Shown here: positions 1-56,111 of the stretch, one piece after another
Layout of the letters: each line of letters starts with the position of its first letter
Numbering within the stretch: the first letter of the stretch is position 1
NCBI RefSeq assembly: GCF_006345805.1
Contig: NW_021831986.1
Coordinates: 151,273-215,272 of the forward strand
Direction of reading: 5' to 3'
Origin: Octopus sinensis
Taxonomy: Eukaryota
DNA: 64,000 nt
Position numbers and translations under genes: made by a program
The notes under the pieces: generated by a model
Seen by the model: only the letters and a program-made list of their open reading frames with translations
The model's database searches: none
Told to the model about the DNA's origin: nothing

Positions 1-2027
1 TCCAGGCCATACTGAGGCCTTTCTTCTTTCTGTGGCTGTCTTCAGTTATGGCTTTATTAATCATTAGTTGATCTTTACAGCCATACGAGCCTTTGCGGCA
101 TCCTTTCTGCTCTTCTGGGAACAGTTTGTTTTCGTCCAGGTGCTTGTTCATCCTTTGTGATATCACTGCAGTAAATGCCTTGAACATAGTAGGGAGGCAG
201 GTTATTGGTCTGTAGTTTTCTGGTTTTTCTGTTTCATTTGATTTAGGAATTAAGATGGTTTTCCCCTTCGTGAGCCATTCAGGCATTGTCTCTGGCTCTG
301 CTAGTACGTTGTTTTCAGCCAGCTTTTTGTGCATTCCTGTTAGATATTTCAACCAGAAGTTGGGGATCTTGTCATGCCCAGGTGCCTTCCAGTTGCTTAG
401 TCTTTGCAGTGCCTGGGTGACCTCTTCAGTTGTTATGTGGGTCCAAGGTTGTTCAGATGCCGAGTTTGTTATTCTGATACTCCTTTTTTTTGGTGGTTCG
501 TTCGCCGACCATATTTCTCCCCAGAATTCTTCCAATTCTTCTGCCGTTGGTGCTGCAGTGACTTCTATTTTATTTTTTCCCAGTTCTTGGTAGAACTTTT
601 TGGGGTTGGAGTTGAACTTTTTGTTTTCTTCAAAGAAGCGTTGGCGTTTCTTGTACCGGCGGATCCTTTGTGCTTTGGCAAGGATATCTTGCTTCAGCTT
701 TTCGTTTATTTCAGGCAAATCTTTCTCTGTGATGTTATATTTGCGGAGTATTTTTGTTCTCTTTTTGTTGCTCAGTAGCGTTGATTGTTTGCTGATTTCA
801 TTAAGAATCGACAGGTCTTTTCTAGTTTTCTTTTTATTTTGCTTTGGATGTTATTTATCCACAGGGTTTGTTTGGGTGGTGGTACTCCTGTTTGGGCGGG
901 TTTGGGTGAGTATCCAGCTTCTTTTGTGGCTGCAGTGGCTGCTGCGTATATTAGGTTATTTAGCACAGTGATATATTTTTTTTTGATTCAGTGGCTATCA
1001 GTTCAGTGACGGCTAGGTTTATGCTGTTTATAATAGGTGTTGTTATTTTGTTTATTTTGATTCTTGGGAGGTATGGTCGGTGGTCCATTTTGAGCTCTGT
1101 GGTTTTCAGTTCTTTGATTATTTTATGTTTTATATTATCATAATCATTAGGCTTCCCTTCGTTGTTTACATCGTGTTTGTTGGGAATGTTGCGTTTGTCT
1201 TCGTGTTATACATTTTCAGTGTTTATATTATTGGGCATTGTTGTGTGGCTTCTATCTACATTTTCCTGGTGTATGTTTTCTTTTAGGTGTTCTATTTCTA
1301 TTTCTGATATTTTTTTTGTGTTGAGAATGTATCTTCGTACCTTAGCTAATTTATTAGGGTTCATTGCTGTATCCAAGTCTATATCTCTATTATTTTCCTT
1401 CCATATTTTATATGTATGTGTTGTTGTATTTTCATTTTTTGGGTAGAGTACTACTGTGCAGTATGCGTGTAAGATAGAAATGTATTCCTCACGTGTCCAT
1501 TTACGTCTTTTGGGTTTTATTTGCGGGACATGAGGTACAACGTCCGGCCCATTATTTTGACGGTCGTCATTTTCGTAGGGTACCGGTCCGTTTATTTCTG
1601 TTGTCACATTATTTCGCACGTGTAGTTTTTCGTACAGTTTTTGTTGTAAGTTTAATGTACGTACCGCTCGATTGTTATTCTTGGGTTGAATAGTATCGGT
1701 GGCATTTAATTTCTTCGTAGTTCCTTTGTACATGGTGTTTGGGGTCGGAGATGATCGTGATGTTCCACGCATGTTTACATGTGTTGCGTTAGAGGCGGAG
1801 ATGATATCGAGTCAAAATACATCATTTCGTTTCGAAAATAGTAATAAATTTCAATTGGTATTACTTACTCGGATACAGTCCAATTCTTTGTTAGTAAAAC
1901 TTTGGCTCCATAGGATGTCCTTGTTTTCGATGTTTGTGGATAGATTTCGGAGCTCTGAATTTTCCTTCTTACATCTTAAACGTCCCCGGTGTTCTCCTTA
2001 CGTCCCCCTGTTCTCCTTACGTCCCCC
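1..2027 (-). mobile_element. R4/Dong-type non-LTR retrotransposon, family A, copy A1 (5' half; RT runs off window start; frameshifted)
   Basis: ORF 1206..1772 has the N-terminal Myb-like block KRRKWTREEY...NPNKLAKVRRYI. Position 1 lies in the RT motif GLSMAW. Nearly identical to 53760-55760. The 5' end abuts (TAA)n. Confidence 0.9.
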
Positions 2028-6927: not shown

Positions 6928-6984
6928 GCTGGATAATCCGTCTATCCGTTTATCTATCTAATTATGTTCGAGAGAAGACAGGAA

Positions 6985-8440: not shown

Positions 8441-8464
8441 ATGGCGATCGCAACTTTAACTAAG
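8438..8464 (-). promoter_or_regulatory. Putative LINE internal promoter start: Inr-like TTAGTT plus YY1-type CGCCATTTT
   Basis: The minus strand reads TTAGTTAAAGTTGCGATCGCCATTTTG at the distal edge of the array. Motif match only. Confidence 0.4.
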
Positions 8465-32000: not shown

Positions 32001-32997
32001 TCAATTGCCCTAGCAGAAGCGTAAATAATTTCATTTAACTCAGTAAAATCAGGTTTTAATTCTCGTATTATTTCATTTGTTACATAGTTGCCAATTTGGA
32101 TTTGTTTTTTATTTTGGTTTGTATTTGAGAGTTTATGAAGTGTTTCTCTATCATTCATACTTGTATGTCTTACAACTTCAAGCGTATTCAGGATTTTCTG
32201 CCTCATTTCTGCCATAGACTCTCTGTGTCCTTCAGCAAATGCGAGATCTTCAGTTACTGTTGTTTTTTCGTTTTCCTGGCTATCTTTAACAGGTACAATA
32301 GAATTTCTTGTATCTTCAGGCCTTTGCGTACTTTGGTCAGATGGCAGTCTTTCAATTAAGCCTCGTGGTGGGCTATACTGTTCATCTGATTCTTCATTTC
32401 CTTTGAGTCGTATATTTATGTCATTTTCCATTGCGTGCTTGATCGCACTTATTTCACTGTCTGTGAGTCTGTTATTTCTAAGGATATCCCTCCTCACATT
32501 TGCTAATTTGTTCTCGTCCAAATAGGGCCTACTGTCTTGATTCCGTGTTCTCCATATACTGTAAGAGTTTGCGGTGTGTCTCTCTTGAGATGGCCTACCT
32601 AATGCATAGTAATAAGCGTATATTACTTCTTTATACTCTCCTCGGGTCCATTTGTTCCGCTTACATTTTTCTTTCTGTGGTGGTTGTGGTGGTGAACTTG
32701 GAGGGCTCGAGTTGGGGGATTTCCCGTTCAAGTGACCATCCATGTCCGTATTCGGAGAAGAGTTTGTGCCAGTTGATGACTTTTCGATCCCAGGCTGGCT
32801 CTTCCCTGGGGGACGCGCTTCCAGATTAACCATAGGACAAGCGATTTGGTATACTGATTTAGTTTTCCTTTTAGTTTCCAAAAACATTTTGGTGCTACGA
32901 TAATGTTATCATTTTTTAGCTTTGATTGGCTAGTGGGGAGACGGCCATCGTTGCCGTTACAATTATAATCGTACCATTATAGCAGCCGTAGTCGGCT
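29056..32997 (-). mobile_element. R4/Dong-type family B, full-length copy B1 (about 3.9 kb, frameshifted)
   Basis: ORFs 31841..32887 (KWTRGEY..KLANVRRDI), 30609..31844 (RT: WIDYKKTFDS, QGDSLSP, YMDD) and 29310..30518 (CRFC..HLISGC; KPDIVVKD..LIDMS). ATT repeats on both sides. Confidence 0.93.
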
Positions 32998-33017
32998 TAT
33001 TATTGTTATTATCATCA

Positions 33018-37520: not shown

Positions 37521-37585
<65 letters not shown>

Positions 37586-37646
37586 GTTATTATTTTTATC
37601 ATATATTATTATTATTATTATTATTGTTATTATTATTATTATTATG

Positions 37647-37698
<52 letters not shown>

Positions 37699-38011
37699 AT
37701 GATTATTAATATTATTATTATTTTTATTATTATTATTACTATTATTATTGTTAATATAATTATTATTATTATCATTATTATCATTAACATTATCATTATC
37801 AATATAATATCATTATTATTATTATTATTATTATTCTTATTCTTATTATTTTTATTATTATTATTATTATTCAGTAGTTAATAATAATAATAATAAAAAT
37901 AATAAGAATAATAATAATAATAATAATAATAATGATATTATATTGATAATGATAATGTTAATGATAATAATGATAATAATAATAATTATATTAACAATAA
38001 TAATAATAATA

Positions 38012-38049
<38 letters not shown>

Positions 38050-38050
38050 A

Positions 38051-38103
<53 letters not shown>

Positions 38104-38108
38104 CATCA

Positions 38109-38182
<74 letters not shown>
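37520..38182. repeat. (ATT)n array containing a ~130-bp-arm inverted duplication
   Basis: 37880-38010 is the reverse complement of 37741-37871. Mirror ORFs 37699..37881(+) and 37867..38154(-) confirm it. Confidence 0.9.
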
Positions 38183-38185
<3 letters not shown>

Positions 38186-40399
38186 TAGTTTTATTTTTAT
38201 TGCGTGCTTTCACTTCACTACCGAGCGCATTTCTGTGTGCCTTGGGTATGTGCTGTGATTTGTTGTGATGCTCTGATGGTTATTGTATGGAAAGTGTTCT
38301 GCGTAGGATGTGTGCAGTGCCTAGTAGTGCAATTTTCTGTATGTTATATGTGTTTGTAAGTCCTGGTGTTTTTGTTATGTATTTGTCTGAATATTTTTTT
38401 ATCATGCCTAATGCACCTACTATGATAGGAATTGTTTCTGTTTTCAGGTTCCACATTCTAGTTACCTCTATTTCCAGGACTTTGTATTTTGAGAGTTTCT
38501 CCATTTCTTTTAGAGACACGTTGTCATCTGCCGGTATTGATACATCAATTAGAAAGCATTTTTTTTCTTCATGGTCTCTGACAACTATATCTGGTCTGTT
38601 GGCCTTAATTTCTCTATCTGTGTGTATCGGCATATCCAGAGTATGGTTGCTTTCTCGTTTTCTGTGACCTTTTCTGGTGTGTGCCTATACCATCTTTTTT
38701 CTGTTGTTATTCCATAATGTTGGCATAGCTTCCAATGTATGTAGGTTCCAACTCTGTCATGTCTGTGAATATATTCCTTCTTAGCCAGGACTGGGCAGCT
38801 AGAGATAATATGATTTATTGTTTCTTGTCCATCTCCACATATTCTGCAGTTACTTGTAATATTTCTTTTCATTACATGTATTTGGTAATTTCTGGTGGGG
38901 AGGCTTTGGTCTTGTGCTGCAATTAAAAATCCCTCTGTTTCTGCTTTGAGTCCTGAGCTTCTCAACCATTGCTGGGATTTTTCTTTGTCTATTTCTTTTG
39001 CGTTTAGTTTAGTGCAGTATTTACCATGAAGGGGTTTTTCTTGCCATCGTTTTATCATGGCTCGTTGCTGTTCTATTTTTAGTTTGGATTTCATTTGTTT
39101 TATAGCTTTTGTTGTTTCTTCATCATCGTCTTCTTCTTCTTTGTGTTTATTAGGTGGTATGATTTCTTGTTTGTATTTGTCAGCTTCCTTAAATACTGAG
39201 AACAGTTTTTTGTTTTGCTCGTGTTTTGCCGCTATCTGGATCAGTTATTTATCCACAGGGTTTGTTTGGGTGGTGGTACTCTCCTGTTTGGGCGGGTTTG
39301 GGTGAGTATCCAGCTTCTTTTGTGGCTGCAGTGGCTGCTGCGTATATTAGGTTATTTAGCTCAGTGATATCACTTTTTTTTGTTTCAGTGGCTAGTTCAG
39401 TGACGGCTAGGTTTATGTTGTTTATAATTGGTGTTGTTATTGCGTTTATTTTTATTCTTGGGAGGTATGGTCGGTGGTCCATTTTGAGCTCTGTGGTTTT
39501 TAGTTCTTTGATTATTTTATTTTTATATTATCATAATCATTAGGCTCCCCTTCGTTGTTTACATCGTGTTTGTTGGGAATGTTGCGTTTGTCTTCGTGTT
39601 TTACAGTTTCAGTGTTTATATTATTGGGCATTGTTGTGTGGCTTCTATCTACATTTTCTTGGTGTATTTTTTCTTTTAAATGTTCTATTTCTATTTCTGA
39701 TATTTTTTTGGCTTTGAGAATGTATCTTCGTACTTTAGCTAATTTATTAGGGTTCATTGCTGTATCCAAGTCTATATCTCTATTATTTTCCTTCCATATT
39801 TTATATGTATGTGTTGTTGTATTTTCATTTTGTGGGTAGAGCATTGCTGTGAAGTATGCGTGTAAGATAGAAATGTATTCCTCACGTGTCCATTTACGTC
39901 TTTTGGGTTTTAATTGCGGGACATGAGGTACAACGTCCGGCCCATTATTTTGACGGTCGTCATTTTCGTAGGGTACCGGTCCGTTTATTTCTGTTGTCAC
40001 ATTATTTCGCACGTGTAGTTTTTCGTACATTTTTTGTTTTAGGTTTAATGTACGTACCGCTCGATTGTTATTCTTGGGTTGAATAGTATCGGTGGCATTT
40101 AATTTCTTCGTAGTTCCTTTGTACATGGTGTTTGAAGTCGGGGATGATCGTGTTGTTCCACGCATGTTTACATGTGTTGTGTTAGAGGTGGAGATAATAT
40201 CGAGTCAAAATACATCATTTCGTTTCGAAAATAGTAATAAATTTCAATTCGTATTACTTACTCGGATATAGTCCAATTCTTTGTTAGTAAATCTTTGGCT
40301 CCATAGGGTGTCCTTGTTTTCGATGTTTGTGGATAGATTTCGGAGCTCTGTATTTTCCTTCTTACATCTTAAACGTCCCCGGTGTCTTCTCTTAACGTC
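38183..40399 (-). mobile_element. Family A copy A3: both termini present, about 1745 bp including the whole RT deleted
   Basis: The junction TGGATCA-GTT-ATTTATCC at 39244-39246 joins the equivalents of A4 positions 52867 and 54612. Confidence 0.92.
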
Positions 40400-40403
40400 A
40401 TTA

Positions 40404-40472
<69 letters not shown>

Positions 40473-40564
40473 GTTATTATCATGATTATTATTATTATTA
40501 ATTTTAATATTGTTATTATCATTATTATCATTATTATCATTATATTATCATTATTATTATTATT

Positions 40565-40620
40565 CAGTAGTTTTATTTTATAGCGTGCTTTCACTTCACT
40601 ACCGAGCGCAGCTCTGTGTG
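40565..40620 (-). mobile_element. Family A 56-nt 3' terminal stub
   Basis: CAGTAGTTTT...GCTCTGTGTG matches the family A 3' terminus at 51812 onward. Confidence 0.88.
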
Positions 40621-42168
40621 ACACAGTCATAAGAGAGCTTGAGCAAGAACAAACATACAAATATTTAGGGATAAATGAAGGCTCTGGTATTCAGCATGCA
40701 AGCATGAAAGAGAAAATCAGGAAGGAATGTTATAGGAGAGTACGTGCAGTCCTGAATCTGAACTAAATGCACGTAACAAGGTGTTAGCTATAAATTCCTT
40801 AGCAGTTCCAGTTGTTACTTATAGCTACAATGTGTTGAACTGGAATATGAGTGAAGTAAAGAATATAGATAGGAAAATACGCAAGCTGCTGAGTTGTAAT
40901 AGGATGCACCACCCAAGGCAGATGTAGATCGCTTTTACCTTCCCAGAGCCCAAGGAGGTCGAGGCCTGATCCAATTTGAACTAGCTTACAAAACAACCAC
41001 AATTGGACTGGCCAAATATCTCGAAATATCGAATGACTGGATGCTAAAGCTCGTGGAAAATCACGAGAGACGAAAGAAGCTTCATTCTATCATAAAGGAA
41101 AGCAAAAAATTTGCTATTGATCTCGTGCAGGATACCCAAACTGAACAACCCGAGGGAAGTACGGCAACTATTGTTGCAAAGAAGGTGAAAATGATGGCAA
41201 TGAAGAAAGCGCACGTGCAATTGGCTGATAGGTGGGAGGAGAAACCTCTGCACGGCAAATATGTGACCCACAGCAAACAAGCTGATGTTGACCAGAAGCA
41301 AACCCATCAGTGGCTACGGAGCTCAGGGCTAAAAGCAGAGAGCGAAGGTTTCATCCTGGCTGCTCAAGATCAAAGCCTATTAACCCGGAACTACCAGGCC
41401 AATGTGATGAAAAATGGAGCAGACCCAAAATGCCGATTCTGCAATGACATGATTGAAACAGTGGACCACCTAATCTCTGGATGTAAAGTCTTAGCACCAG
41501 TGGAGTATAAATTAAGACATGACAGAGTTGGCCAATATCTCCACTGGCTAATAAGTCGGCATTACAATATCAAAACTGCCGACAAGTGGTATAATCACCA
41601 CCCTGAGGCTGTAACTGAAGGAGAAAATGTAACCATTCTGTGGATCTTTCCAGTACATACAGACCGAACCATCAAGGCCATTAAACCAGATATTGTTGTG
41701 AAAGACCAAAACAATAAAGTTTGCTTATTGATCGACATGAGCATCCCCTGTGATCATAATATCTCAGCGAAAGAGTTTGACAAGCTCAGAAAATAAAAAA
41801 AAGACCTACTCATTGAAATTGAGAAAATGTGGCATCTCAAGGCGGTTACAATACCAGTGATCGTAGGAGCACTAGGAATGATCAAGAAGGGAACCGAAAA
41901 TTATATGAGAATGATCCCTGGCTTACCATCCCTGCAAGAAGTGCAAAAGATTGTCTTAACTGGTACATCACACGTATTGAGAAGAGCATTGTCGATGTGA
42001 GAACTGTTGCTGATCATGTATTTTAAGTTAACTTGAAAAAAAAAAATGAACGAACTACTGAGTTTGGTTTAATGGCCTACCAATATATACTATGAGTTTC
42101 TTTGCCCTAGGAGTCGGGAAGACACTCGGCAAGAAATGGAAGCAAATTTGAAAGAAGAAAAAAAGAAG
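40621..42168 (+). mobile_element. Family B copy B2, 5'-truncated, plus strand
   Basis: Near-identical reverse complement of about 29056-30600. ORF 41041..41796. Followed by (TAA)n. Confidence 0.92.
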
Positions 42169-42199
<31 letters not shown>

Positions 42200-42483
42200 A
42201 ATAATAATATTAATAACCATTATATTAATAATAATGATAAAAATAATAGTAATAATTAAAAAAATAATAACAATATATTTAATAATAATATCAATAATAA
42301 GAAGAAGTAGAATAATGATTATTATAATAATAATGATAATGATAATAAAAATAATGATAATGATTATAATAATAATATTAATAGCAATAATAATAATAAT
42401 AATAATTATAGCAATAATAATAATAATAATAATATTAAATTAATAATGATAATAGCAATAATAATATAATAATAATAATACTG

Positions 42484-42527
<44 letters not shown>

Positions 42528-42535
<8 letters not shown>

Positions 42536-43218
42536 CGACAAAGAAGAAGAAGATGATGAAGAAACAACAAAAACTATAGAACAAATGAAATCCAAACTAA
42601 AAATAGAACTGCAACGAACCATGATAAAACGATGGCAAGAAAAGCCACTTCATTATAAATACTGCACTAAACTAAACGCAAAAGAATAGACAAAGAAAAA
42701 TCCCAGCAATGGTTGAGAAGCTCAGGACTCAAAGCAGAAACAGAGGGATTTTTAATTGCAGCACAAGACCAAAGCCTCCCCACCAGAAATTACCAAAAAC
42801 ATGTAATGAAAAGAAATATTACAAGTAACTGCAGAATATGTGGAGATGGACAAGAAACAATAAATCATATTATCTCTAGCTGCCCAGTCCTGGCTAAGAA
42901 GGAATATATTTACAGACATGACAGAGTTGGAACCTACATACATTGGAAGCTATGCCAACATTATGGAATAACAACAGAAAAAAGATGGTATAGGCACACA
43001 TCAGAAAAGGTCACAGAAAACGAGAAAGCAACCATACTCTGGATATGCCGATACACACAAATAGAGAAATTAAGGCCAACAGACCAGATATAGTCTGTAT
43101 CAATACCGGCAGATGACAATGTGTCTCTAAAAGAAATGGTGAAACTCTCAAAATACAAAGACCTGGAAATAGAGGTAACTAGAATGTGGAATCTGAAAAA
43201 AGAAACAATTCCTATCAT
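42528..43218 (+). mobile_element. Family A internal fragment, plus strand (NKYDKEEE to ETIPII)
   Basis: ORF 42713..43093 contains the zinc-knuckle region. Preceded by (TAA)n. Confidence 0.9.
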
Positions 43219-44000
43219 CGTTTTATCATGGTTCGTTGCTGTTCTGTTTTTAGTTTGGATTTCATTTGTTTTATAGCTTTTGATGTTTCTTCTTCTTCTC
43301 TTCTTCTTCTCTTCTTCTTCTTCTTCTTATCTTCTTCTTCTTCTTCTTCTTCTTCTTCTCTTATTCTTCTTCTTCTTCTTCTTCTTTTTTTTTTCTTCTC
43401 CTCCTCCTTCTTTTCTTCTTCTTCTTCTTATTCTTCTTCTTCTTCTTCTTCTTCTTCTTCTTCTTCTTCTCTCTTTCTTCTTTTCCTTCTTCCTTCTTCT
43501 CTTCTTCTTCTTCTTCTTCTCTTCTTCTTCTTCTTCTTCTTCTTCTCTTCTTCTTCTTCATTTTTATTAGGTGGTATGATTTCTGTTTGTATTTGTCAGC
43601 TTCCTTAAATACTGAGAACAGTTTTGTTTTGCTCGTCTTTTGCCGCTATTTGTATCACTTTTCCTTCCTTCTGAAGTAGATATTTTTGCAGTCCTATGGT
43701 GGTTATTTTATAGTAGTTTTCCAGTTGTATAAGGCCTCTACCACCTTCTATACGTTGTATATATAGTCTTTCTATGTCAGATTTGGGGTGATGCATCCTA
43801 GATCCTGTCATTATTTTTCTTGTTTTCTATCTATTTTGGTCAGGTCATTCAATGTCCAGTTAACGATATTGTAGCTGTAACTTATAACTGGGACAGCTAG
43901 AGTGTTAATACCTTTTATCTTGTTTTTAGCATTGAGCTCTGTGTTTAGTATTGATCTAACTCGTCTATAATATTCTTTTTTTATTTTCTCTTTCATTTGT
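43216..44000 (-). mobile_element. Family A internal fragment, minus strand (QMKE to IKR), with expanded (GAA)n
   Basis: ORFs 43811..43996 (MKEKIKKEYYRR) and 43605..43811. About 275 bp of TTC repeat at 43287-43560. Confidence 0.9.
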
Positions 44001-45143
44001 CTTTTATTATTATTATTATAAGTATTAATTTTATTAATATTATTATAATTATTATTAAGTTTATTAATGTTGTTATTGTTGTGGTTGTTATTGTTGTTAT
44101 TCTTATTCTTCTTATGTTAATTATTATTATTATCATTATTATTATTAATAATATTATTATTATTATTACTGTTATAATAATTATCATTATTATTATTATA
44201 TTTACTATTACTTTTGTTATTATTATTATTATTCTTATAAATAGTATTATTATTACTATTATTGTTATTATTATGATTATTACTAATATTCTTCTTCTTC
44301 TTATTATATTATTAACATTATCATTATTATTTTTTAGTTGTTATTATTAATAATATTAATATATTATTAATATATCATTATTATTATTATTATTTTTATT
44401 ATTGATATTATTATTATTATTATTATATATCATTATCATTATTTTTGTAATTATTATTATTTTTATCAATATTATTAATAGTATTATCATTATTTTATTA
44501 TTATTATTATTATATATCATTATTATTATTATTGTCATTTTTATTTTTATCATCATTATCATTATCATTATCGTTATTATTATAATTATTTTTATTATTA
44601 TTAATTATTATTATTATATTATTAGTATTATATATTATTTTATATATTATTATATTATTATTATTATAATATTTATCAGTATCATTATCAATATAATATT
44701 ATTTTATTTTAATCATTATTACTATTTTTATTATTGTTGTTATCAGTATTAATATTATTATTATAATTTTTATTATTAATATTATCATTATTATTAATTT
44801 TATTTAGATCATTATTATTATTTTAATTAGTATCATTATCATTATCATTATTATTATCATTATTGTTATTATTATTATTAATATCGTTATTATTATTACT
44901 TTTATAATTATTATTTATTATTATTATTATAATTATTATTATTAGCATTATATTTATTTTTTTGCTAACATCATGATTATTAATATCATTATTTTTTAAT
45001 ATTATTGTTATTATTATTAAGAATATTGTTATTATTATTATTATTATGAAATATATTTACATTATTATTAATATTATTATTATTATTATTACAATTATTA
45101 TTATCATTTTCATTATTATTATTATTATTATTATTATTAATAA

Positions 45144-45176
<33 letters not shown>

Positions 45177-45193
45177 CATTATTATTATTATTA

Positions 45194-45235
<42 letters not shown>

Positions 45236-45613
45236 AACAATATATTATCAATATTATTATCCTTGTTATTATTTGTATTATTATTATTATTATTATTATC
45301 ATCATTATTAACATCATTATTGTTATTGTTCTTATTATTATTATAAATAGTATTATTATAATTATTATCATAATTATTTATAGTATTATTTTTATTATTA
45401 ATAATATTATCATTATGATTATTATTATTATTATTAATATTATTATTATCATTATCATTATTAATATCATTATTATTAATATTATTATTATTATCTTAAT
45501 CGTTATCATTATCATTATCATTATCATTATTGTTATTATTATTATTTTTATTATTATTATTAATATTAACATTATTATTATTATAGTTATTATCATAATT
45601 ATCATTAGCATTT

Positions 45614-45683
<70 letters not shown>

Positions 45684-46213
45684 CATCATTATCATTATCA
45701 ATATCTTTATCAGTATTGTTATTGTTATTATTATTACAATTATTATCATTCTTATTATTTTTCTTATTATTATTATCATCGTTAATATTATTGTTATTAT
45801 CATTATGATTATTAATATTATTATTATTTTTAATATTATTACTATTATTGTTAATATTATTATTGTTATTATCTTTATTATTATTATAATTATGATAATA
45901 TTATCAATATTATTTCCATTATTATTATTATTATTATTGTTATTAACATTTTTATTATTATCATTTTCATTATCATTATATTATCATCAATATTATTATT
46001 TTTATTATTATTAATAATAATAACTTATTATTATATTATCATCAATATTAATTATTTTAATATTATTAATAATATTATCTTATTATTATTGTTATTCTTA
46101 TTCTTTTTATCATTATCATTTTCGTTATTATTATTATTTCTATTATTATTACTATTATTATGATTATTATTATTATTAATATAATTATTGTTAATATTAA
46201 TATTAATATTATC

Positions 46214-46246
<33 letters not shown>

Positions 46247-46293
46247 GTTATTATTATTATTATTATTATTATCATTAACATTATTATTTTTAT

Positions 46294-46326
<33 letters not shown>

Positions 46327-46336
46327 TATTATTATT
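44001..46336. repeat. Degenerate (ATT)n array
   Basis: Direct triplet repeat. Confidence 0.96.
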
Positions 46337-47421
46337 CAGTAGTTTTATTTTTATAGCGTGCTTTCACTTCCCTACCGAGCGCAGCTCTGTGTGCCTTGGG
46401 TATGTGCTGTGATTTGTTGTGATGCTCTGATGGTTATTGTATGGAAAGTGTTCTGCGTAGGATTTGTGCAGTGCCTAGTAGTGCAATTTTCTGTATGTTA
46501 TATGTGTTTGTAAGTCCTGGTGATTTTGTTATGTATTTGTCTGAATATTTTTTTATCATGCCTAATGCACCTACTATGATAGGAATTGTTTCTGTTTTCT
46601 GATTCCACATTCTAGTTACCTTTATTTCCAGGTCTTTGTATTTTGAGAGTTTCTCCATTTCTTTTAGAGACACATTGTCATCTGCCGGTATTGATACATC
46701 AATTAGAAAGCATTTTTCTTCTTCATGATCTCTGACAACTATATCTGGTCTGTCGGCCTTAATTTCTCTATTTGTGTTTATCGGCATATCCCAGAGTATG
46801 TTTGCTTTCTCGTTTTCTGTGACCTTTTCTGGTGTGTGCCTATTCCATCTTTTTTCTGTTGTTATTCCATAATGTTGGCATAGTTTCCAATGTATGTAGG
46901 TTCCAACTCTGTCATGTCTGTGAATATATTCCTTCTTAGCCAAGACTGGGCAGCTAGAGATAATATGATTTATTGTTTCTTGTCCATCTCCACATATTCT
47001 GCAGTTACTTGTTATATTTCTTTTCATTACATGTTTTTGGTAATTTCTGGTGGGGAGGCTTTGGTCTTGTGCTGCAATTAAAAATCCCTCTGTCTCTGCT
47101 TTGAGTTCTGAGCTTCTCAACCATTACTGGGATTTTTCTATGTCTATTTCTTTTGCGTTTAGTTTAGTGCAGTCTTTACCATGAAGGGGCTTTTCTTGCC
47201 ATCGTTTTATCATGGTTCGTTGCTGTTCTGTTTTTAGTTTGGATTTCATTTGTTTTATAGCTTTTGTTTCTTCTTCTTCTTCTTCTTCTTCTTCTTCTTC
47301 TTCTTCTTCTTCTTCTTCTTCTTCTTCTTCTTCTTCTTCTTCTTCTTCTTCTTCTTCTTCTTCTTCTTCTTCTTCTTCTTCTTCTTCTTCTTCTTCTCTC
47401 TTCTTCTTCTTCTCCTCTTCT

Positions 47422-47453
<32 letters not shown>

Positions 47454-47857
47454 TTCTTCTTCATATTTATTAGGTGGTATGATTTCTTGTTTGTATTTGT
47501 CAGCTTCCTTAAATACTGAGAACAGTTTTATGTTTTGCTCGTCTTTTGCCGCTATTTGTATCACTTTTCCTTCCTTCATGTCTGTGAATATATTCCTTCT
47601 TAGGCAGGACTGGGCAGCTAGAGATAATATGATTTATTGTTTCTTGTCCATCTCCACATATTCTGCAGTTACTTGTAATATTTCTTTTCATTACATGTTT
47701 TTGGTAATTTCTGGTGGGGAGGCTTTGGTCTTGTGCTGTAATTAAAAATCCCTGTTTCTGCTTTGAGTCCTGAGCTTTTCAACCATTGCTGGGATTTTAC
47801 TTTGTCTATTTCTTTTGCGTTTAATTTAGTGCAGTATTTACCATGAAGGGTCTTTTC
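46337..47857 (-). mobile_element. Family A copy A6 (3' part with poly-Glu expansion) plus a second zinc-knuckle fragment at 47578-47857
   Basis: ORFs 46434..47120 (knuckle plus REL) and 47124..47579. 47578-47857 repeats about 46913-47195 with sequence differences. Confidence 0.9.
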
Positions 47858-49906
47858 CTCAACATCCTGGAAAACACATCGGAAACTTCCTGATAAGATC
47901 CGAGGATTTGAATTAAAGTTCCCGGGGTTACCGGAAAAAATCATGGAAACTCCGTTGGAGATTCCGAGGGTATAAACGAAAGTTCCTGGGTTTTCCTGGA
48001 AAATGTTTAGGATCTTCATGTTAAAATCCGAGGACATCCTGGAAAGTTCCTGGGATTACAAAACTTTCTGGAAAATTGGTCACAAATTTCATGAAAGTTC
48101 CGAGGATTTCCTGGAAATTTCCGGTGATACCCCCAACATCCTGGAAATTTGGTCGGAAACTTAATGGAATTTCCGGAGTCTCCCCAACTTACTGGAAAAT
48201 ATCTCGGAATCTCCCTGGAAAGTTCCCAGGGTTTATTGGAAAATACCGGGGATGCCCAACTTCCTGGAAAATTAGTCGGTAACTAAATTAAAAGTTCCAG
48301 GGATGTCCCCAACACCCTGGTATATTGGTAGAAATCTTCTTTTAAAATTCCGAGGATTTCATGGAAAGTTCCGGGGATTCCACCAATTTACCGGAAAATA
48401 TGGAATCTTCCTTGGAAGTTCCGAGGATTTTATAGAAACTTCTGGTGATTCCATAACTTCATGGAAAATTTGTCGCGATCTTCATGGAAAGTTCCGAGAA
48501 TTTCCTGGTAAGTTCTGGGGATTTCCCAACTTCGTGGAAAATTAATCAGAAAATTCATGGAAAGTTCCGACGATTTACTGGAAATTAAGGGGTTTACTAA
48601 ACTTCCTGGAAAATTGGAAGAAACTTCCTGGGATGTTCCGAGGATTTCCTGGAAAGTTCCTTGGATTTTTCAACCTACTGGAAAATTGGTCGCAAATTTC
48701 ATGGAAAGTTTCGATGATTTTCCCCACCTCCTGGAAAATTGGTCAGGATCATCATGGAAAGTTCCCATGAAGTTTGGTAATCCCAGGAAGTTTCGAGGAA
48801 ATCCTCGTAACTTACCATGAAGATCCCGACAATTTTCCAGTAATTTGGGAAATCCCAGGAACTTTCCATTAAATCCCCGGAACCTCCCATTAAGTTTCCA
48901 TGAAATTTCCCGGCAAGTTGGTGGAATCCCCGGAAGTTTCCATGAAATCCTAGGAATTTTCCCTGAAGTTTTCTACCAATTTTCCAGGATGTTGATCTTC
49001 CCCTGAACTTTCTTTGAAACCCTCGGAACTTTCCAGGAATTTTTCGAGATATTTCTAGGAAGTTTGGGGATTTCCCGGAACTTTCCATTAAATCCTCGGA
49101 ACCTGCCATGAAGTTTCCATGAAATCCGAGGAATTTTCCCTGAAGTTTTCTACCAATTTTCCAGGATGTTGATCTTCCCCTGAACTTTCTTTGAAACCCT
49201 CGGAACTTTCCAGGAATTTTTCGAGATATTTCTAGGAAGTTGGGGGAATTCCCGGAACTTTCCATTAAATCCTCGGAACCTCCCATGAAGTTTCCATGAA
49301 ATTTCCCGGTAAGTTGGTGGAATCCCCGGAAGTTTCCATGAAATCCTAGGAGTTTTCCATGAAGTTTTCTACCAATTTTCCAGGATGTTGATCTTCCCCT
49401 GAACTTTCTTTGAAACCCTCGGGACTTTCCAGGAATTTTTCGAAATATTTCTAGGAAGTTGGGGGAATTCCCGGAACTTTCCATGAAGTTCCCGATGAGT
49501 TTTCTAGGAAGTTGGGAAATATTATGAACTTTCCATTAAATCCTCGGAAATTCCTGGAAAATTGGACAGATACTTCATGGAAAGTTCCGAGAATTTTCCG
49601 AACCTCCTCGAAAATTGGTCAGAAACTTCATGGATATTTCCGAGGATTTCATGGAAAGTCCCGCGGATTCACCCACTTACCGGAAAATGTCATGGAAATT
49701 TCGTGGGAAGTTCCAATGCCTTAATGGAAAGTTCCTCGTATTGCCCAAGTTCCTGGAAAATTTTTGCGGGAACTTCATGGAAATATCCGGTGATTCCTCC
49801 AACTTCCTGGAAATATCTCGATTAAATTCCTGGAAAGTTCATAGGGTTGCAAAGAAAGTTCCTGGGATTCCCCAACTTCCTTGAAAATTGGTAGAAAACT
49901 TCATGG
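47858..49906. repeat. GGAAA/TTTCC-rich degenerate satellite with an inverted central block at about 48801-49550
   Basis: Units such as CATGGAAAGTTCCGAGGATTT occur in forward orientation outside the block and as reverse complements inside it. Longer repeats in the block recur at spacings of 177 and 219 bp. Confidence 0.88.
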
Positions 49907-51777: not shown

Positions 51778-51811
<34 letters not shown>

Positions 51812-51814
<3 letters not shown>

Positions 51815-54800
51815 TAGTTTTATTTTTATAGCGTGCTTTCACTTCACTACCGAGCACAGCTCTGTGTGCCTTGGGTATGTGCTGTGATTTGTTGTGATGC
51901 TCTGATGGTTATTGTATGGAAAGTGTTCTGCGTAGGATGTGTGCAGTGCCTAGTAGTGCAATTTTCTGTATGTTATATGTGTTTGTAAGTCCTGGTGTTT
52001 TTGTTATGTATTTGTCTGAATATTTTTTTATCATGCCTAATGCACCTACTATGATAGGAATTGTTTCTGTTTTCAGATTCCACATTCTGGTTACCTCTAT
52101 TTCCAGGTCTTTGTATTTTGAGAGTTTCTCCATTTCTTTTAGAGACACGTTGTCATCAGCCGGTATTGATACATCAATTAGAAAGCATTTTTTTTCTTCA
52201 TGATCTCTGACAACTATATCTGGTCTGTTGGCCTTAATTTCTCTATCTGTGTGTATCGGCATATCCCAGAGTATGGTTGCTTTCTCGTTTTCTGTGACCT
52301 TTTCTGGTGTGTGCCTATACCATCTTTTTTCTGTTGTTATTCCATAATGTTGGCATAGCTTCCAATGTATGTAGGTTCCAACTGTCATGTCTGTGAATAT
52401 ATTCCTTCTTAGCCAGGACTGGGCAGCTAGAGATAATATGATTTATTGTTTCTTGTCCATCTCCACATATTCTGCAGTTACTTGTAATATTTCTTTTCAT
52501 TACATGCTTTTGGTAATTTCTGGTGGGGAGGCTTTGGTCTTGTGCTGCAATTAAAAATCCCTGTTTCTGCTTTGAGTCCTGAGCTTCTCAACCATTGCTG
52601 GGATTTGTCTTTGTCTATTTCTTTTGCGTTTAGTTTAGTGCAGTATTTACCATGAAGGGGCTTTTCTTGCCATCGTTTTATCATGGCTCGTTGCTGTTCT
52701 ATTTTTAGTTTGGATTTCATTTGTTTTATAGCTTTTGTTGTTTCTTCATCTTCTTCTTCTTCTCCATGTTTATTAGGTGGTATGATTTCTTGTTTGTATT
52801 TGTCAGCTTCCTTAAATACTGAGAACTGTTTTTTGTTTTGCTCGTGTTTTGCCGCTATCTGGATCAGTTTTCCTTCCTTCTGAAGTAGATATTTTTGCAG
52901 TCCTATGGTGGTTATTTTATAGTAGTTTTCCAGCTGTATAAGGCCTCTACCACCTTCTATACGTTGTATATATAGTCTTTCTATGTCAGATTTTGGGTGA
53001 TGCATCCTAGATCCTGTCATTATTTTTCTTGTTTTCCTATCTATTTTGGTCAGTTCATTTCGTGTCCAGTTAAGGATGTTGTAGCTGTAACTTATAACTG
53101 GGACAGCTAAAGTGTTGATACCTATTATCTTGTTTTTAGCATTGAGCTCTGTGTTTAGTATTGATCTAACTCGTCTATAATATTCTTTTTTTATTTTCTC
53201 TTTCATTTGTGTGTGTTGTGTCTTATCTAGTTCATGGATTCCTAAGTATTTGTAAGTTTGGCTTTGGTCTAATTCTTTTATTTCATTGGTTTTATCTAGT
53301 GTGATGTTGTTACTCTTAACTAGTTTTCCTCTTTTCAGGGTTACTTTGGCGCATTTTTCTAATCCAAATTTCATATCTATTTCTTTGGTAAATCCATGAA
53401 CTGTCTTTAATAGTGTTTCCAGCTGTTTGTCATTTGCAGCGTATAGTTTTAGGTCATCCATATATAAAAGGTGGCTGATCGTTTTGCCGTAACATTTATA
53501 TCCGCATCCAGTTCTATTTAGGTGACAGTGCCAAGCAGAAAAGGAGTGGAGAGAGCGTGTCTCCCTGGAATATTCCTCTTCTAATGGGGATGTCTTTGGT
53601 TTTTATGAGTCCCTCTTTTCTTTGGAGGTGTAGGACTGTTTGCCATTTATTCATAGAGTGCTCTATGAATTTTATGATTGTTGGTGCTACTTTGTTAATG
53701 GCTAGTGTTTCGAGGATCCATGTGTGGGGGATGCTATCAAACGCCTTTTTGTAGTCAATCCAGGCCATACTGAGGCCTTTCTTCTTTCTGTGGCTGTCTT
53801 CAGTTATGGCTTTATTAATCATTAGTTGATCTTTACAGCCATACGAGCCTTTGCGGCATCCTTTCTATTCTTCTGGGAACAGTTTGTTTTCGTCCAGGTG
53901 CTTGTTCAGCCTTTGTGATATCACTGCAGTAAATGCCTTGAACATAGTAGGGAGGCAGGTTATTGGTCTGTAGTTTTCTGGTTTTTCTGTTTCATTTGAT
54001 TTGGGAATTAAGATGGTTTTCCCCTTCGTGAGCCATTCAGGCATTGTCTCTGGCTCTGCTAGTACTTTGTTAAAGTTTTCAGCCAGCTTTTTGTGCATTC
54101 CTGTTAGATATTTCAACCAGAAGTTGGGGATCTTGTCATGCCCAGGTACCTTCCAGTTGCTTAGTCTTTGCAGTGCCTGGGTGACCTCTTCAGTTGTTAT
54201 GTGGGTCCAAAGTTGTTCAGATACCGAGTTTGTTATTTTGATACTCCTTTTTTTTGGTGGTTCGTTCGCCGACCATATTTCTCCCCAGAATTCTTCCAAT
54301 TCTTCTGCCGTTGGTGCTGCAGTGACTTCTATTTTATTTTTTCCCAGTTCTTGGTAGTACTTTTTGGGGTTAGAGTTGAACTTTTTGTTTTCTTCAAAGA
54401 AGCGTTGGCGTTTCTTGTACCGGCGGATCCTTTGTGCTTTGGCAAGGATATCTTGCTTCAGCTTTTCTTTTATTTCAGGCAAATCTTTTTCTGTGATGTT
54501 ATATTTGCGGAGTATTTTTGTTCTCTTTTTGTTGCTCAGTAGCGTTGATTGTTTGCTGATTTCATTAAGAATCGACAGGTCTCTTCTAATTTTTTTTATT
54601 TTGCTTTGGATGTTATTTATCCACAGGATTTGTTTGGGTGGTGGTACTCCTGTTTGGGCGGGTCTGGGTGAGTATCCAGCTTCTTTTGTGGCTGCAGTGG
54701 CTGCTGCGTATATTAGGTTATTTAGCTCAGTGATATCAATTTTTTTTGATTCAGTGGCTATCAGTTCAGTGACGGCTAGGTTTATGTTGTTTATAATAGG

Positions 54801-55883
54801 TGTTGTTATTTTGTTTATTTTGATTCTTGGGAGGTATGGTCGGTGGTCCATTTTGAGCTCTGTGGTTTTCAGTTCTTTGATTATTTTATTTTTTATATTA
54901 TCATAATCATTAGGCTCCCCTTCGTTGTTTACATCGTGTTTGTTGGGAATGTTGCGTTTGTCTTCGTGTTTTACAGTTTCAGTGTTTATATTATTGGGCA
55001 TTGTTGTGTGGCTTCTATCTACATTTTCCTGGTGTATGTTTTCTTTTAGGTGTTCTATTTCTATTTCTGATTTTTTTTTGTGTTGCGAATGTATCTTCGT
55101 ACGTTAGCTAATTTATTAGGGTTCATTGCTGTATCCAAGTCTGTATCTCTATTATTTTCCTTCCATATTTTATATGTATGTGTTGTTGTATTTTCATTTT
55201 TTGGGTAGAGTACTGCTGTGAAGTATGCGTGTAAGATAGAAATGTATTCCTCACGTGTCCATTTACGTCTTTTGGGTTTTATTTGCGGGACATGAGGTAC
55301 AACGTCCGGCCCATTATTTTGACGGTCGTCATTTTCGTAGGGTACCGGTCCGTTTATTTCTGTTGTCACATTATTTCGCACGTGTAGTTTTTCGTACATT
55401 TTTTGTTGTAAGTTTAATGTACGTACCGCTCGATTGTTATTCTTGGGTTGAATAGTATCGGTGGCATTTAATTTCTTCGTAGTTCCTTTGTACATGGTGT
55501 TTGGGGTCGGAGATGATCGTGATGTTCCACGCATGTTTACATGTGTTGCGTTAGAGGCGGAGATGATATCGAGTCAAAATACATCATTTCGTTTCGAAAA
55601 TAGTAATAAATTTCAATTAGTATTACTTACTCGGATACAGTCCAATTCTTTGTTAGTAAAACTTTGGCTCCATAGGATGTCTTTGATTTCGATGTTTGTG
55701 GATAGATTTCGGAGCTCTGAATTTTCCTTCTTACATCTTAAACGTCCCCGGTGTTCTCCTCCTTAAACGTCCCTGGTGTTCTCCTCTTAAACGTCCCCGG
55801 TGTTCTCCTCTTAAACGTCCCCGGTGTTCTCCTCTTAAACGTCCCCGGTGTTCTCCTCTTAAACGTCCCCGGTGTTCTCCTCC
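51812..55883 (-). mobile_element. Family A copy A4, full-length (about 4.07 kb), degenerate
   Basis: ORF pieces 55061..55534, 53865..55001, 53514..53822, 52478..53461 and 51909..52388 give Myb-like, RT, CCHC and REL (PD..D..K) domains. Nonsense CAG>TAG at 53865 and a short deletion near 53520. (TAA)n at both ends. Confidence 0.94.
55737..55881 (-). repeat. Six tandem copies of the family A 5'-terminal 24-mer AGGAGAACACCGGGGACGTTTAAG
   Basis: On the plus strand, units start at 55737, 55762, 55786, 55810, 55834 and 55858. One unit has a single substitution. Confidence 0.97.
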
Positions 55884-55948
<65 letters not shown>

Positions 55949-56042
55949 ATATTATAATAATAATAATGTAATTTATTATTATTATTTTTATTATTATTAT
56001 TATTATTATTTTTATTATTTTATTATTATATAATAATATAAT

Positions 56043-56106
<64 letters not shown>

Positions 56107-56111
56107 GTAAT

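What the first reader, a model, noticed from the sequence alone, without database searches (positions are those of the whole stretch)
55737..55883. Six-copy TAA-punctuated tag array at the 5' end of a TAA-targeting retrotransposon
Seen: the sense strand is (TAA)n-GG-[AGGAGAACACCGGGGACGTTTAAG]x6-ATG.... Each unit equals about 21 nt of the element's 5' end plus TAA, so every unit boundary mimics the genuine flank junction. A1 and A3 show different, shorter versions, and family B shows none. Established: R2-type RTs jump templates at RNA 5' ends, and HeT-A/TART accumulate 5' tags. Inference: family A regenerates or ratchets its 5' end by re-annealing cDNA at the internal TAA, or by reinserting into its own tag. 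This would protect against terminal loss and could record successive transposition rounds. It is the best candidate here for an undescribed mechanism.
Basis: partly seen in the sequence, partly recalled or inferred. Interest (0 to 1): 0.78.

Follow-up and report, generated by a model that had tools for sequence, protein, structure and literature searches.

The report
Variable 5' tag repeat on Dong-type retrotransposon
A jumping gene that targets TAA repeats carries six tandem copies of its own first 24 bases; the array is real, but closely resembles 5'-end duplications already described for related R2 elements, so it is a variant of a known thing.

Summary
On the minus strand, 55737-55883 reads (TAA)n-GG-[AGGAGAACACCGGGGACGTTTAAG]x6-ATG. 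There are two blemishes: a G>A change in unit 5 and one extra G before unit 6. Chance expectation is 0.

The host element, family A (51812-55883), is an R4/Dong-type non-LTR retrotransposon. It has a single broken ORF, no N-terminal cysteines, an RT, a CCHC motif and a restriction-like endonuclease. It has no APE domain, and (TAA)n lies on both sides.

All three family A 5' ends in the window carry more than one unit: 6.1, 2.4 and 1.4. The insertions are independent, and the outermost units end at different points. The tags differ far more than the element bodies, which are 1.7-3.5% apart. About eight other Dong-like 5' junctions show no tags.

I read the array as a fast-evolving 5' leader repeat. 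It probably grows and shrinks by out-of-register re-priming between TAAG-bounded repeats during reverse transcription or second-strand synthesis. Post-insertion DNA slippage is not excluded. Reinsertion into the element's own tag is rejected.

This is not an undescribed mechanism. R2 5' junctions show 13-28 nt tandem duplications, up to three copies, with a published 5'-extension model. Mouse L1 monomers are a further analogue. The host genome could not be found, so no tag census was possible.

The parts
55884..56111 (-). (TAA)n tract upstream of the element: the insertion target, or the tail of an earlier insertion
   Evidence: TRF 55884-56111, period 3; read directly
55882..55883 (-). GG between (TAA)n and the first full unit. 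It may be extra junction nucleotides, or TAAGG may be the remnant of a truncated seventh unit
55737..55881 (-). Six tandem 24-nt units AGGAGAACACCGGGGACGTTTAAG (55858-81, 55834-57, 55810-33, 55786-809, 55762-85 with G>A at 55774, extra G at 55761, 55737-60)
55535..55736 (-). Unique part of the 5' UTR (ATGTAAGAAGGAAAATTCAGAGC...), shared by A1, A2 and A3
55492..55536 (-). Weak candidate core of an HDV-like ribozyme: P2 55536-32 / 55496-92, P3 55531-29 / 55520-18, L3 55528-21, P1' UCAUCUC 55516-10. Its P1 partner would be GAGGAGA at each unit boundary. Unproven.
   Evidence: Descriptor search; 4 of 300 shuffles give a hit at that start; no thermodynamic support; no Rfam hit
51909..55534 (-). Single ORF of family A copy A2, broken into at least six pieces: Cys-free N-terminus with a KRRKWTREEY motif, RT, CCHC zinc knuckle, restriction-like endonuclease (KANRPDIVV...LIDVS)
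   Evidence: colinear tblastx with a termite Dong-like element
51812..51908 (-). 3' UTR ending ...GCACGCTATAAAAATAAAACTACTG. The same end is seen in A3 (38183), the copy ending at 46337 and the fragment at 40565
51778..51811 (-). (TAA)n tail/target downstream of A2
   Evidence: TRF
1975..2027 (-). A1 5' tags: partial unit GGGGGACGTA (2027-2018), variant 19-nt unit (2017-1999), canonical unit (1998-1975). (TAA)n lies at 2028-2373. The A1 body runs off the window start
40368..40400 (-). A3 5' tags: T + partial unit GACGTTAAG (40400-40391) and unit AGAAGACACCGGGGACGTTTAAG (40390-40368). (TAA)n lies at 40401-40564. A3 (38183-40400) has an internal deletion

Best explanation
The array is a variable-number repeat of the 5' leader of an R4/Dong-type, (TAA)n-specific non-LTR retrotransposon.

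Shown: the repeat abuts the 5' junction, and every boundary is a TAAG(G) that copies the flank junction. All three independent family A 5' ends have a different number of units. Their outermost unit is cut at a different point: at TAAG in A2, at the G-run in A1, and at GACG plus one stray T in A3. The tags differ far more than the element bodies.

Inferred: unit number changes when a nascent strand realigns out of register on the repeated leader. One route is that the cDNA 3' end switches to the homologous box of a second RNA. The other is that the new second strand slips back on the cDNA between TAAG microhomologies. The variable outermost end is then set by microhomology-primed second-strand synthesis on the (TAA)n top strand. 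That behaviour is documented for R2.

A longer array would incidentally buffer the element against 5' truncation, but the sequence gives no evidence that it counts transposition rounds.
For: The array and its boundaries are real.

Three of three family A 5' ends carry extra units, of 6.1, 2.4 and 1.4. The flanks beyond the TAA tracts are unrelated, so these are independent insertions.

The A1 and A2 bodies differ by 1.7%, and private substitutions are only 8 and 6 in 1.13 kb. Yet their distal tags are completely different. A1's two distal units share three indel or substitution differences from its own proximal unit. They are therefore not fresh DNA copies of their neighbour.

A2's array has 1 substitution and 1 indel in 147 nt, against about 0.8 expected since insertion. 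It need not be younger than the insertion.

No comparable complex repeat occurs anywhere else in about 12 kb of family A sequence in the window.

Published precedent (PMC3774820): R2 5' junctions carry tandem duplications of 13-28 nt, some in three copies. They have non-templated bases or small deletions between the repeats, arise through microhomology priming, and extend the 5' end over time.

One other Dong-like copy shows a 13-nt junction duplication that also includes the AAG of the flank (L002:12405-12429).
Against: Only three 5' ends could be examined, and the host genome is in none of the searchable collections.

Once two units exist, ordinary replication slippage or unequal exchange gives the same products.

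This locus shows strong DNA-level repeat instability: a 14-kb TAA tract, and (GAA)65-93 expansions inside other family A copies.

About eight other Dong-like full-length 5' junctions have no tags. The behaviour is therefore not a general property of the enzyme.

A2 is a dead copy with at least five ORF breaks.

The extra G sits in a G-run, where simple slippage is also likely.
Confidence: 0.45

Rival explanations
1. The array arose by post-insertion DNA slippage. An ancestral family A master acquired one TAAG-bounded duplication. After that, each genomic copy expanded or contracted on its own by replication slippage or unequal sister-chromatid exchange, as any minisatellite does. Retrotransposition plays no part.
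For: TAAG microhomology at every boundary. Units 1-4 of A2 are identical. The neighbourhood is extremely repeat-unstable: 14.4 kb of (TAA)n, and (GAA)n runs expanded to 65 and 93 repeats inside other family A copies at a site that is a short run in A2. A2 is a dead copy, so nothing requires the array to have been transposed.
Against: A1's distal units are not copies of its proximal unit: they differ by three shared indel or substitution events in about 20 nt, against about 0.7% private divergence. The three outermost units end at different internal points, directly against (TAA)n. That looks like 5'-junction formation rather than in-place slippage. A2's array carries about as many changes as expected if it is as old as the insertion.
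Confidence: 0.3
2. This is an R2-style duplication of a ribozyme P1 strand. The unit would carry the 5' strand (P1) of an HDV-like self-cleaving ribozyme like the one proven for Bombyx Dong. Each unit would then be an alternative cleavage site, so transcripts and new copies begin at different units. In the boldest version, the 24-nt fragments released between two cleavage sites serve as acceptors for end-to-end template jumps, each jump adding one unit.
For: Dong's ribozyme cleaves exactly at the TAA/element junction, and duplicated P1 copies are discussed for R2 (PMC3774820). My HDV descriptor gives a single hit in the first 40 start positions of A2. Its P1, GAGGAGA, begins exactly at the unit boundary, and its P2 strands contain the two first AUGs. 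Only 4 of 300 shuffles place a hit there. In that phase the two stray G's lie exactly at unit junctions, as expected for non-templated bases added at jumps.
Against: No Rfam hit at any threshold. The fold is no more stable than shuffles. P4 is absent, P1 has an A.A mismatch, and there is one base between P3' and P1'. A3 has three changes in the 45-nt core. The descriptor gave no junction-precise fold for the other Dong-like elements, so its sensitivity here is unproven. The relatives L003 and L128:8523 start with GGGGYCAAGGG, as does A1's outer end (TAA|GGGGG), which argues for a different RNA 5' end.
Confidence: 0.2
3. The units are promoter monomers. Each would be a small internal-promoter module kept in several copies by selection, as with mouse L1 monomers, and transcripts starting inside the array would explain the truncated outermost unit.
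For: Unit number varies and the 5'-most unit is truncated, as in L1Md (PMC6454616). GGACGT in the unit fits the insect DPE consensus RGWYVT (my own knowledge of the motif).
Against: No initiator motif lies at the required 27-28 nt upstream; the nearest CA is 2 nt out of register (read from the sequence). A 24-nt unit is about a tenth the size of known monomers. The three outermost units start at three different unit positions.
Confidence: 0.1
4. The element reinserted into its own tag, targeting the TAA inside the unit.
For: Each unit contains one TAA, and the element targets (TAA)n.
Against: A new insertion brings a 3' UTR and a TAA tail. No such sequence lies between units. 5'-truncated insertions keep the 3' end, not the 5' end. 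A single TAA is not the tract seen at every real insertion.
Confidence: 0.02
5. The unit number is an assembly artefact.
For: Reads could not be inspected.
Against: The array spans 147 nt and contains two unit-specific variants. Two other loci hold independent, different arrays.
Confidence: 0.03

Closest known systems
Tandem direct duplications at R2 5' junctions and the '5' extension' model (Eickbush, Burke, Zhou & Eickbush 2013, PMC3774820)
   Same: Both belong to the same superfamily (RT plus restriction-like endonuclease, target-primed reverse transcription). The duplications are short (13-28 nt), lie exactly at the 5' junction, and are sometimes multi-copy (a 3x 20-mer is listed). Stray bases or small deletions lie between repeats. 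They are explained by microhomology priming of the second strand and are proposed to lengthen the element's 5' end over time.
   Different: In R2 the duplicated sequence is upstream 28S target carried on the RNA because the ribozyme cleaves upstream. Here the unit is element-specific and only its TAA(G) end resembles the target. Six copies exceeds the number reported for R2. All three copies seen carry extra units, against 5-70% of junctions in R2 species.
Dong (Bombyx mori) and the R4/Dong clade
   Same: (TAA)n target, single ORF, RT plus restriction-like endonuclease, and an N-terminus without zinc fingers (PMC7998251, PMC3774820).
   Different: No 5' tag array is described for Dong. Its 5' end (GCTCCCTAAAATCC, from the published primer) is unrelated. 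Its ribozyme is proven, whereas family A's is not.
Mouse L1 (L1Md) 5' monomer arrays
   Same: Tandem 5' UTR units of variable number with a truncated 5'-most unit. Duplication is thought to offset truncation-prone retrotransposition by an unknown mechanism (PMC6454616).
   Different: L1Md monomers are about 200 bp with proven promoter activity, in an APE-type LINE with no site specificity.
HeT-A/TART 5' tags at Drosophila telomeres
   Same: Extra sequence at the 5' end is proposed to buffer the element against terminal loss (George et al. 2010, as cited in bioRxiv 10.1101/782904).
   Different: Those tags are copied from the 3' end of the upstream element, because the promoter lies there. The family A unit has no match to any 3' end.

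Membership tests
R4/Dong clade non-LTR retrotransposon | Reverse transcriptase domain | tested here: met
   RVT_1 hits on three consecutive ORF pieces. Insect RT relatives at 40-48% identity.
R4/Dong clade non-LTR retrotransposon | C-terminal CCHC motif plus restriction-like endonuclease, and no APE domain | tested here: met
   CRICGDGQETINHIISSC followed by KANRPDIVV...LIDVS. zf-RVT hit. Aligns to the endonuclease region of R2 proteins 9nl3 and 9dou, at a weak E of 0.015-0.023. No Exo_endo_phos hit, unlike the two APE-type LINEs in the window.
R4/Dong clade non-LTR retrotransposon | Single ORF | tested here: met
   The six ORF pieces are contiguous and colinear with one termite element across frame shifts. 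The copy itself is broken.
R4/Dong clade non-LTR retrotransposon | N-terminus without zinc fingers but with a diverged Myb/SANT domain (PMC7998251) | tested here: inconclusive
   There are no cysteines in the first 157-217 residues, so there is no zinc finger. A KRRKWTREEY...IWKENN motif is present and shared with relatives L133 and L134. Pfam finds no Myb even at E=10.
R4/Dong clade non-LTR retrotransposon | Insertion into (TAA)n | tested here: met
   (TAA)n abuts the 5' end of A1, A2 and A3 and the 3' end of four copies.
R4/Dong clade non-LTR retrotransposon | HDV-like ribozyme cleaving at the 5' junction (shown for Dong and R4) | tested here: inconclusive
   No Rfam hit. One weak descriptor hit with P1 at the unit boundary, without energetic support.
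R4/Dong clade non-LTR retrotransposon | Groups with Dong/R4 reference proteins in an RT tree | not tested
   No Dong or R4 reference sequence was reachable with the tools.
R2-type 5'-junction direct duplication | Tandem duplication directly at the 5' junction | tested here: met
R2-type 5'-junction direct duplication | The duplicated sequence is upstream target DNA carried on the RNA | tested here: not met
   The unit is not (TAA)n. Only its last 4-5 bases, TAAG(G), match the flank junction.
R2-type 5'-junction direct duplication | Unit length equals the distance from the ribozyme cleavage site to the junction | not testable with these tools
   This needs a mapped RNA 5' end or a cleavage assay.
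R2-type 5'-junction direct duplication | Stray bases or small deletions between repeats | tested here: met
   Extra G at 55761. T-run of 1, 2 or 3 before TAAG, and a G-run of 4 or 5, among A1, A3 and A2 units.
L1Md-type promoter monomers | Variable number of 5' UTR units with a truncated 5'-most unit | tested here: met
   6.1, 2.4 and 1.4 units, with the outermost unit cut at different points.
L1Md-type promoter monomers | Each unit has promoter activity | not testable with these tools
   There is a DPE-like GGACGT, but no correctly spaced initiator (read from the sequence).
HeT-A/TART tags | Tag derived from the 3' end of the upstream element | tested here: not met
   The 24-mer (up to 3 mismatches) and the 13-mer (up to 2 mismatches) match only the three 5' ends. 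The 3' UTR is unrelated.

The most novel reading that the evidence does not exclude
Family A has a true RT-driven 5' ratchet. A self-cleaving ribozyme would use the repeated GAGGAGA (or GGGG) box as alternative P1 strands. The cDNA, on reaching the RNA 5' end, would jump either onto the homologous box of another transcript or onto the 24-nt fragments released between two cleavage sites. Each jump would add one unit, so that unit number rises along active lineages and offsets 5' loss.
Probability: 0.12. Interest if true: 0.7.

Novelty: new variant of a known kind. Interest (0 to 1): 0.4.

Why it matters
How the 5' end of a LINE is joined to the chromosome is the least understood step of target-primed reverse transcription. 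That step covers second-strand priming and template jumping. It also limits the precision of R2-based gene-insertion tools.

A Dong-type family whose 5' leader changes copy number between closely related insertions would be a natural readout of that step in a non-rDNA, microsatellite target. If the unit proves to hold the ribozyme P1 strand, it would extend the R2 '5' extension by duplicated P1' model to the R4/Dong clade.

If the array is only slippage, it is an ordinary minisatellite on a transposon.

Tried and rejected
- **Census of family A 5' ends elsewhere.** Exact-pattern scans of metagenome, genome and viral contigs found nothing relevant. The best protein relatives are only 43-48% identical, so the host genome is not available.
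- **Rfam.** Nothing was found at gathering or E<=10 thresholds on the window, or at E<=1 on a relative's locus holding three or more Dong-like 5' ends. The negative is therefore uninformative for this clade.
- **First HDV descriptor (span 300).** It gave only weak AU/GU-rich hits.
- **Shared 17-nt motif.** GATC[A/C]TCTCCGACCCCA is shared with a termite element. It is not colinear and has blast E=0.16 over whole elements. It lies in the coding region of family A and is treated as possibly chance.
- **5' UTR alignment to relatives.** Only the first ~30 nt look similar.
- **Initiator/DPE promoter reading.** The spacing is off by 2 nt.
- **Reinsertion into the element's own tag.** Rejected on structure.
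- **Tag from the element's 3' end (HeT-A style).** No match found.
- **Plus-strand ORF 55696-55947 ('LKRPRCSP' repeats).** This is an artefact of translating the repeat.

Full report
**1. What is there**

Read on the minus strand, 55960-55700 is a long (TAA)n tract, then GG, then six head-to-tail copies of AGGAGAACACCGGGGACGTTTAAG, then ATGTAAGAAGGAAAATTCAGAGC. Tandem Repeats Finder gives period 24, 6.1 copies, 96% matches and score 278 at 55736-55882. A search for the 24-mer with up to 3 mismatches finds the six copies plus one at 1975-1998, with none expected in shuffles. The only blemishes are a G>A at 55774 in unit 5 and one extra G at 55761 before unit 6.

**2. What carries it**

The array is the 5' end of a 4.07-kb element, family A copy A2, on the minus strand at 51812-55883. 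Its reading frame starts at ATG 55534 and is broken into at least six colinear pieces.

- Pfam finds RVT_1 on three pieces and zf-RVT on the CCHC piece. It finds no APE domain, unlike the two APE-type LINEs elsewhere in the window.
- The C-terminal piece has CX2CX8HX4C followed by KANRPDIVV...LIDVS. It aligns, weakly (E 0.015-0.023), to the restriction-like endonuclease region of solved R2 proteins.
- The N-terminal 157-217 residues contain no cysteine, so there is no zinc finger. They carry a KRRKWTREEY...IWKENN motif shared with relatives. Pfam does not call it Myb.
- The element ends ...AAAACTACTG followed by (AAT)n in four copies, and (TAA)n precedes all three 5' ends.

These are the features that the literature gives for the R4/Dong clade: RT plus REL-endonuclease, no N-terminal zinc fingers, and a (TAA)n target in most insects (PMC7998251). 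I could not place the element in a tree with Dong itself. The nearest proteins are 40-48% identical and come from insects such as a psyllid and the termite Cryptotermes. The host genome is not in any collection I could search.

**3. Other copies in the window**

A self-comparison finds the following family A sequences:

- A1 at 1-2027, cut by the window edge.
- A3 at 38183-40400, with an internal deletion.
- A 5'-truncated copy at 27695-29038.
- Two rearranged 3' portions, at 42542-44000 and 46337-47857.
- A 58-nt 3' fragment at 40565-40622.

Only A1, A2 and A3 retain a 5' end.

- A1 reads TAA-GGGGGACGTA-AGGAGAACAGGGGGACGTA-AGGAGAACACCGGGGACGTTTAAG-ATG.
- A3 reads TAA-T-GACGTTAAG-AGAAGACACCGGGGACGTTTAAG-ATG.

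All three therefore carry more than one unit (6.1, 2.4, 1.4), and the outermost unit is cut at a different place in each. The sequences beyond the TAA tracts are unrelated, so these are separate insertions.

**4. Rates**

- A1 and A2 bodies differ at 33 of 1971 aligned positions (1.7%). A3 differs from either by about 3.5%.
- In the 1.13 kb shared by all three, private substitutions number 8 (A1), 6 (A2) and 30 (A3).
- From A2's private rate, about 0.8 changes are expected in 147 nt since insertion, and one substitution plus one single-base indel is seen. The array could be as old as the insertion, and no later homogenisation needs to be assumed.
- A1's two distal units agree with each other but differ from A1's own proximal unit by three events in about 20 nt: loss of AG after TAAG, CC>G, and loss of TT. 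This is far above A1's 0.7% private divergence. They are not recent DNA copies of their neighbour.
- A1 and A2 are near-identical elements with entirely different distal tags. The tags therefore turn over much faster than the body diverges.
- No other complex tandem duplication occurs in about 12 kb of family A sequence here.

**5. Phase is ambiguous**

Two other phases are equally legitimate.

- Starting at GGGG gives GGGGACGTTTAAG plus AGGAGAACACC. In this phase A1's outer end is a precise TAA|GGGGG. Two related elements from other genomes also begin GGGGYCAAGGG directly after (TAA)n: the termite element at L003:6451 and L128:8523.
- Starting at GAGGAGA places both stray G's exactly at unit junctions.

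Which phase is biologically real depends on where the RNA starts, and sequence alone does not show that.

**6. Ribozyme question**

Bombyx Dong has a proven HDV-like ribozyme that cuts exactly at the TAA/element junction. R2 elements with duplicated leaders have two alternative P1 strands (PMC3774820).

- Rfam finds nothing, at gathering or permissive thresholds. It also finds nothing on a locus with several other Dong-like 5' ends, so this negative says little.
- My own HDV descriptor recovers the human CPEB3 ribozyme as a control.
- With spans up to 800 nt, the descriptor gives one hit among the first 40 start positions of A2. P1 is GAGGAGA, beginning exactly at the unit boundary. P1' is UCAUCUC (55516-55510). 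P3 is CGU/ACG, L3 is GGAACAUC, and P2 is ACAUG/CAUGU. The two P2 strands contain the first two AUGs of the ORF.
- With the downstream sequence shuffled, 4 of 300 trials give a hit at that start and 35 of 300 give a hit anywhere in the first 40 nt.
- The fold has no P4, an A.A mismatch in P1, and one base between P3' and P1'. It is not more stable than shuffles. A3 has three changes in the core.

I treat this as a lead with roughly one chance in five, not a finding.

**7. Relatives**

I fetched 14 loci around related proteins and listed every (TAA)n-to-unique boundary.

- About eight boundaries look like full-length 5' ends of Dong-like elements: family B in the window, L003, L004, L127:5648, L128:912, L128:4707, L128:8522, and possibly L127:9775. 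None has a tag array.
- One family with three copies shows only the usual few variable bases at the junction (TAA-TTTGTCC or TAA-TCAGTGTCC).
- One boundary, L002:12405-12429, reads TAAG-AGTTAACATC-AAG-AGTTAACATG. This is a 13-nt junction duplication that again includes the AAG of the flank.

Junction duplication therefore occurs sporadically in the clade, as in R2, while a persistent multi-unit leader is particular to family A.

**8. Mechanism**

Reinsertion into the element's own tag is excluded. An insertion brings a 3' UTR and a TAA tail, and nothing of the kind lies between units. HeT-A-style tags are excluded because the unit matches no 3' end.

What remains is out-of-register realignment of a growing strand on the repeated leader. 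Once two boxes exist, the cDNA's last 13-24 nt are complementary to an internal box of any other transcript, and the nascent second strand can slip back on the cDNA between TAAG repeats. Each such event adds or removes exactly one unit. The variable outer ends match the junction classes described for R2 (PMC2718515, PMC3774820):

- TAAG microhomology in A2;
- a precise G-run start in A1;
- a small loss plus one stray T in A3.

The same products could come from replication slippage or unequal exchange after insertion. The locus is plainly unstable at the DNA level: a 14.4-kb TAA tract, and (GAA)65 and (GAA)93 expansions inside other family A copies at a short poly-Glu codon run.

I favour the retrotransposition-coupled origin at 0.45, against 0.30 for pure post-insertion slippage. 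The reasons are the error-laden A1 units, the junction-type outer ends, and the restriction of the repeat to the 5' terminus. With three copies this cannot be settled.

**9. Novelty**

The 2013 R2 paper already reports the following:

- a 3x 20-mer listed among the junction inserts;
- stray bases between repeats;
- the argument that such duplications let cleavage occur at either P1 copy and extend the element's 5' end over time.

Mouse L1 monomer arrays are a second, well-known case of a variable 5' repeat that offsets truncation by an unknown mechanism (PMC6454616).

Three things are new here. The clade is Dong-type on a microsatellite target. The unit is element-specific rather than target-derived. 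The copy number is higher and the repeat is present in every copy seen. That makes it a new variant of a known kind, of moderate interest, and a useful natural system if the host genome can be surveyed.

Noticed in passing
window 13316-27677: A 14.4-kb nearly pure (TAA/TAT)n tract. Several shorter tracts (2028-2373, 37521-38201, 42169-42532, 44004-46336) each abut an end of a retrotransposon copy.
   Followed up: partly
window 43287-43559 and 47268-47462: Plus-strand (TTC)93 and (TTC)65, which is (GAA)n on the element's sense strand, lie inside two other family A copies. They sit exactly where A2 has a short poly-Glu codon run (52742-52767, GEEEEDEE). A coding microsatellite has expanded within transposon copies.
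   Followed up: partly
window 40565-40622 (-): A 58-nt 3'-terminal fragment of family A, ending ...AAAACTACTG, lies directly upstream of the TAA tract that precedes A3. This gives a head-to-tail chain. It could be a serial insertion into the previous copy's TAA tail, or an end-to-end template jump.
   Followed up: partly
window 29056-33010 (-) and 40619-42164 (+): Family B is a second element with RT and zf-RVT and no APE domain, also in (TAA)n. Its 5' end reads TAA|GCCGACTACGGCTGC with no tag. One full-length copy and one 5'-truncated copy (98% identical) are present. A third related family lies at about 9000-10774 (-).
   Followed up: partly
window 3069-8441 (-): An APE-type LINE has an intact 1034-aa ORF2 at 3069-6173 and a putative ORF1 at 6394-6927. 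Tandem arrays of 87 bp (x4.9) and 313 bp (x3.3) at 7046-8441 lie just upstream. This may be a monomer-type 5' UTR.
   Followed up: no
window 48291-49487: Blocks of a 72-73-bp satellite lie in opposite orientations (48291-48765 versus 48779-49487), with a 177-bp higher-order repeat.
   Followed up: no
L003:6451-6700 and L128:8523-8790: Two Dong-like elements from different genomes share a conserved 5' UTR of about 250 nt. It includes a hairpin with a compensatory change (GGGGAGTAAACCCC versus GAGGAGTAAACCTC), which suggests a structured 5' RNA in this sub-clade.
   Followed up: partly
window 55502-55518 (-), 1740-1756 (-); L003:6476-6492: The 17-nt GATC[A/C]TCTCCGACCCCA is shared between the start of the family A ORF and the extreme 5' end of the termite element. 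The two sites are not colinear, and blast E is 0.16 over whole elements, so the match may be chance.
   Followed up: partly
L002:12405-12429: A 13-nt duplication, TAAG-AGTTAACATC-AAG-AGTTAACATG, lies at the (TAA)n junction of another RT-encoding copy in an unrelated genome. The duplicated unit again includes the AAG of the flank.
   Followed up: partly
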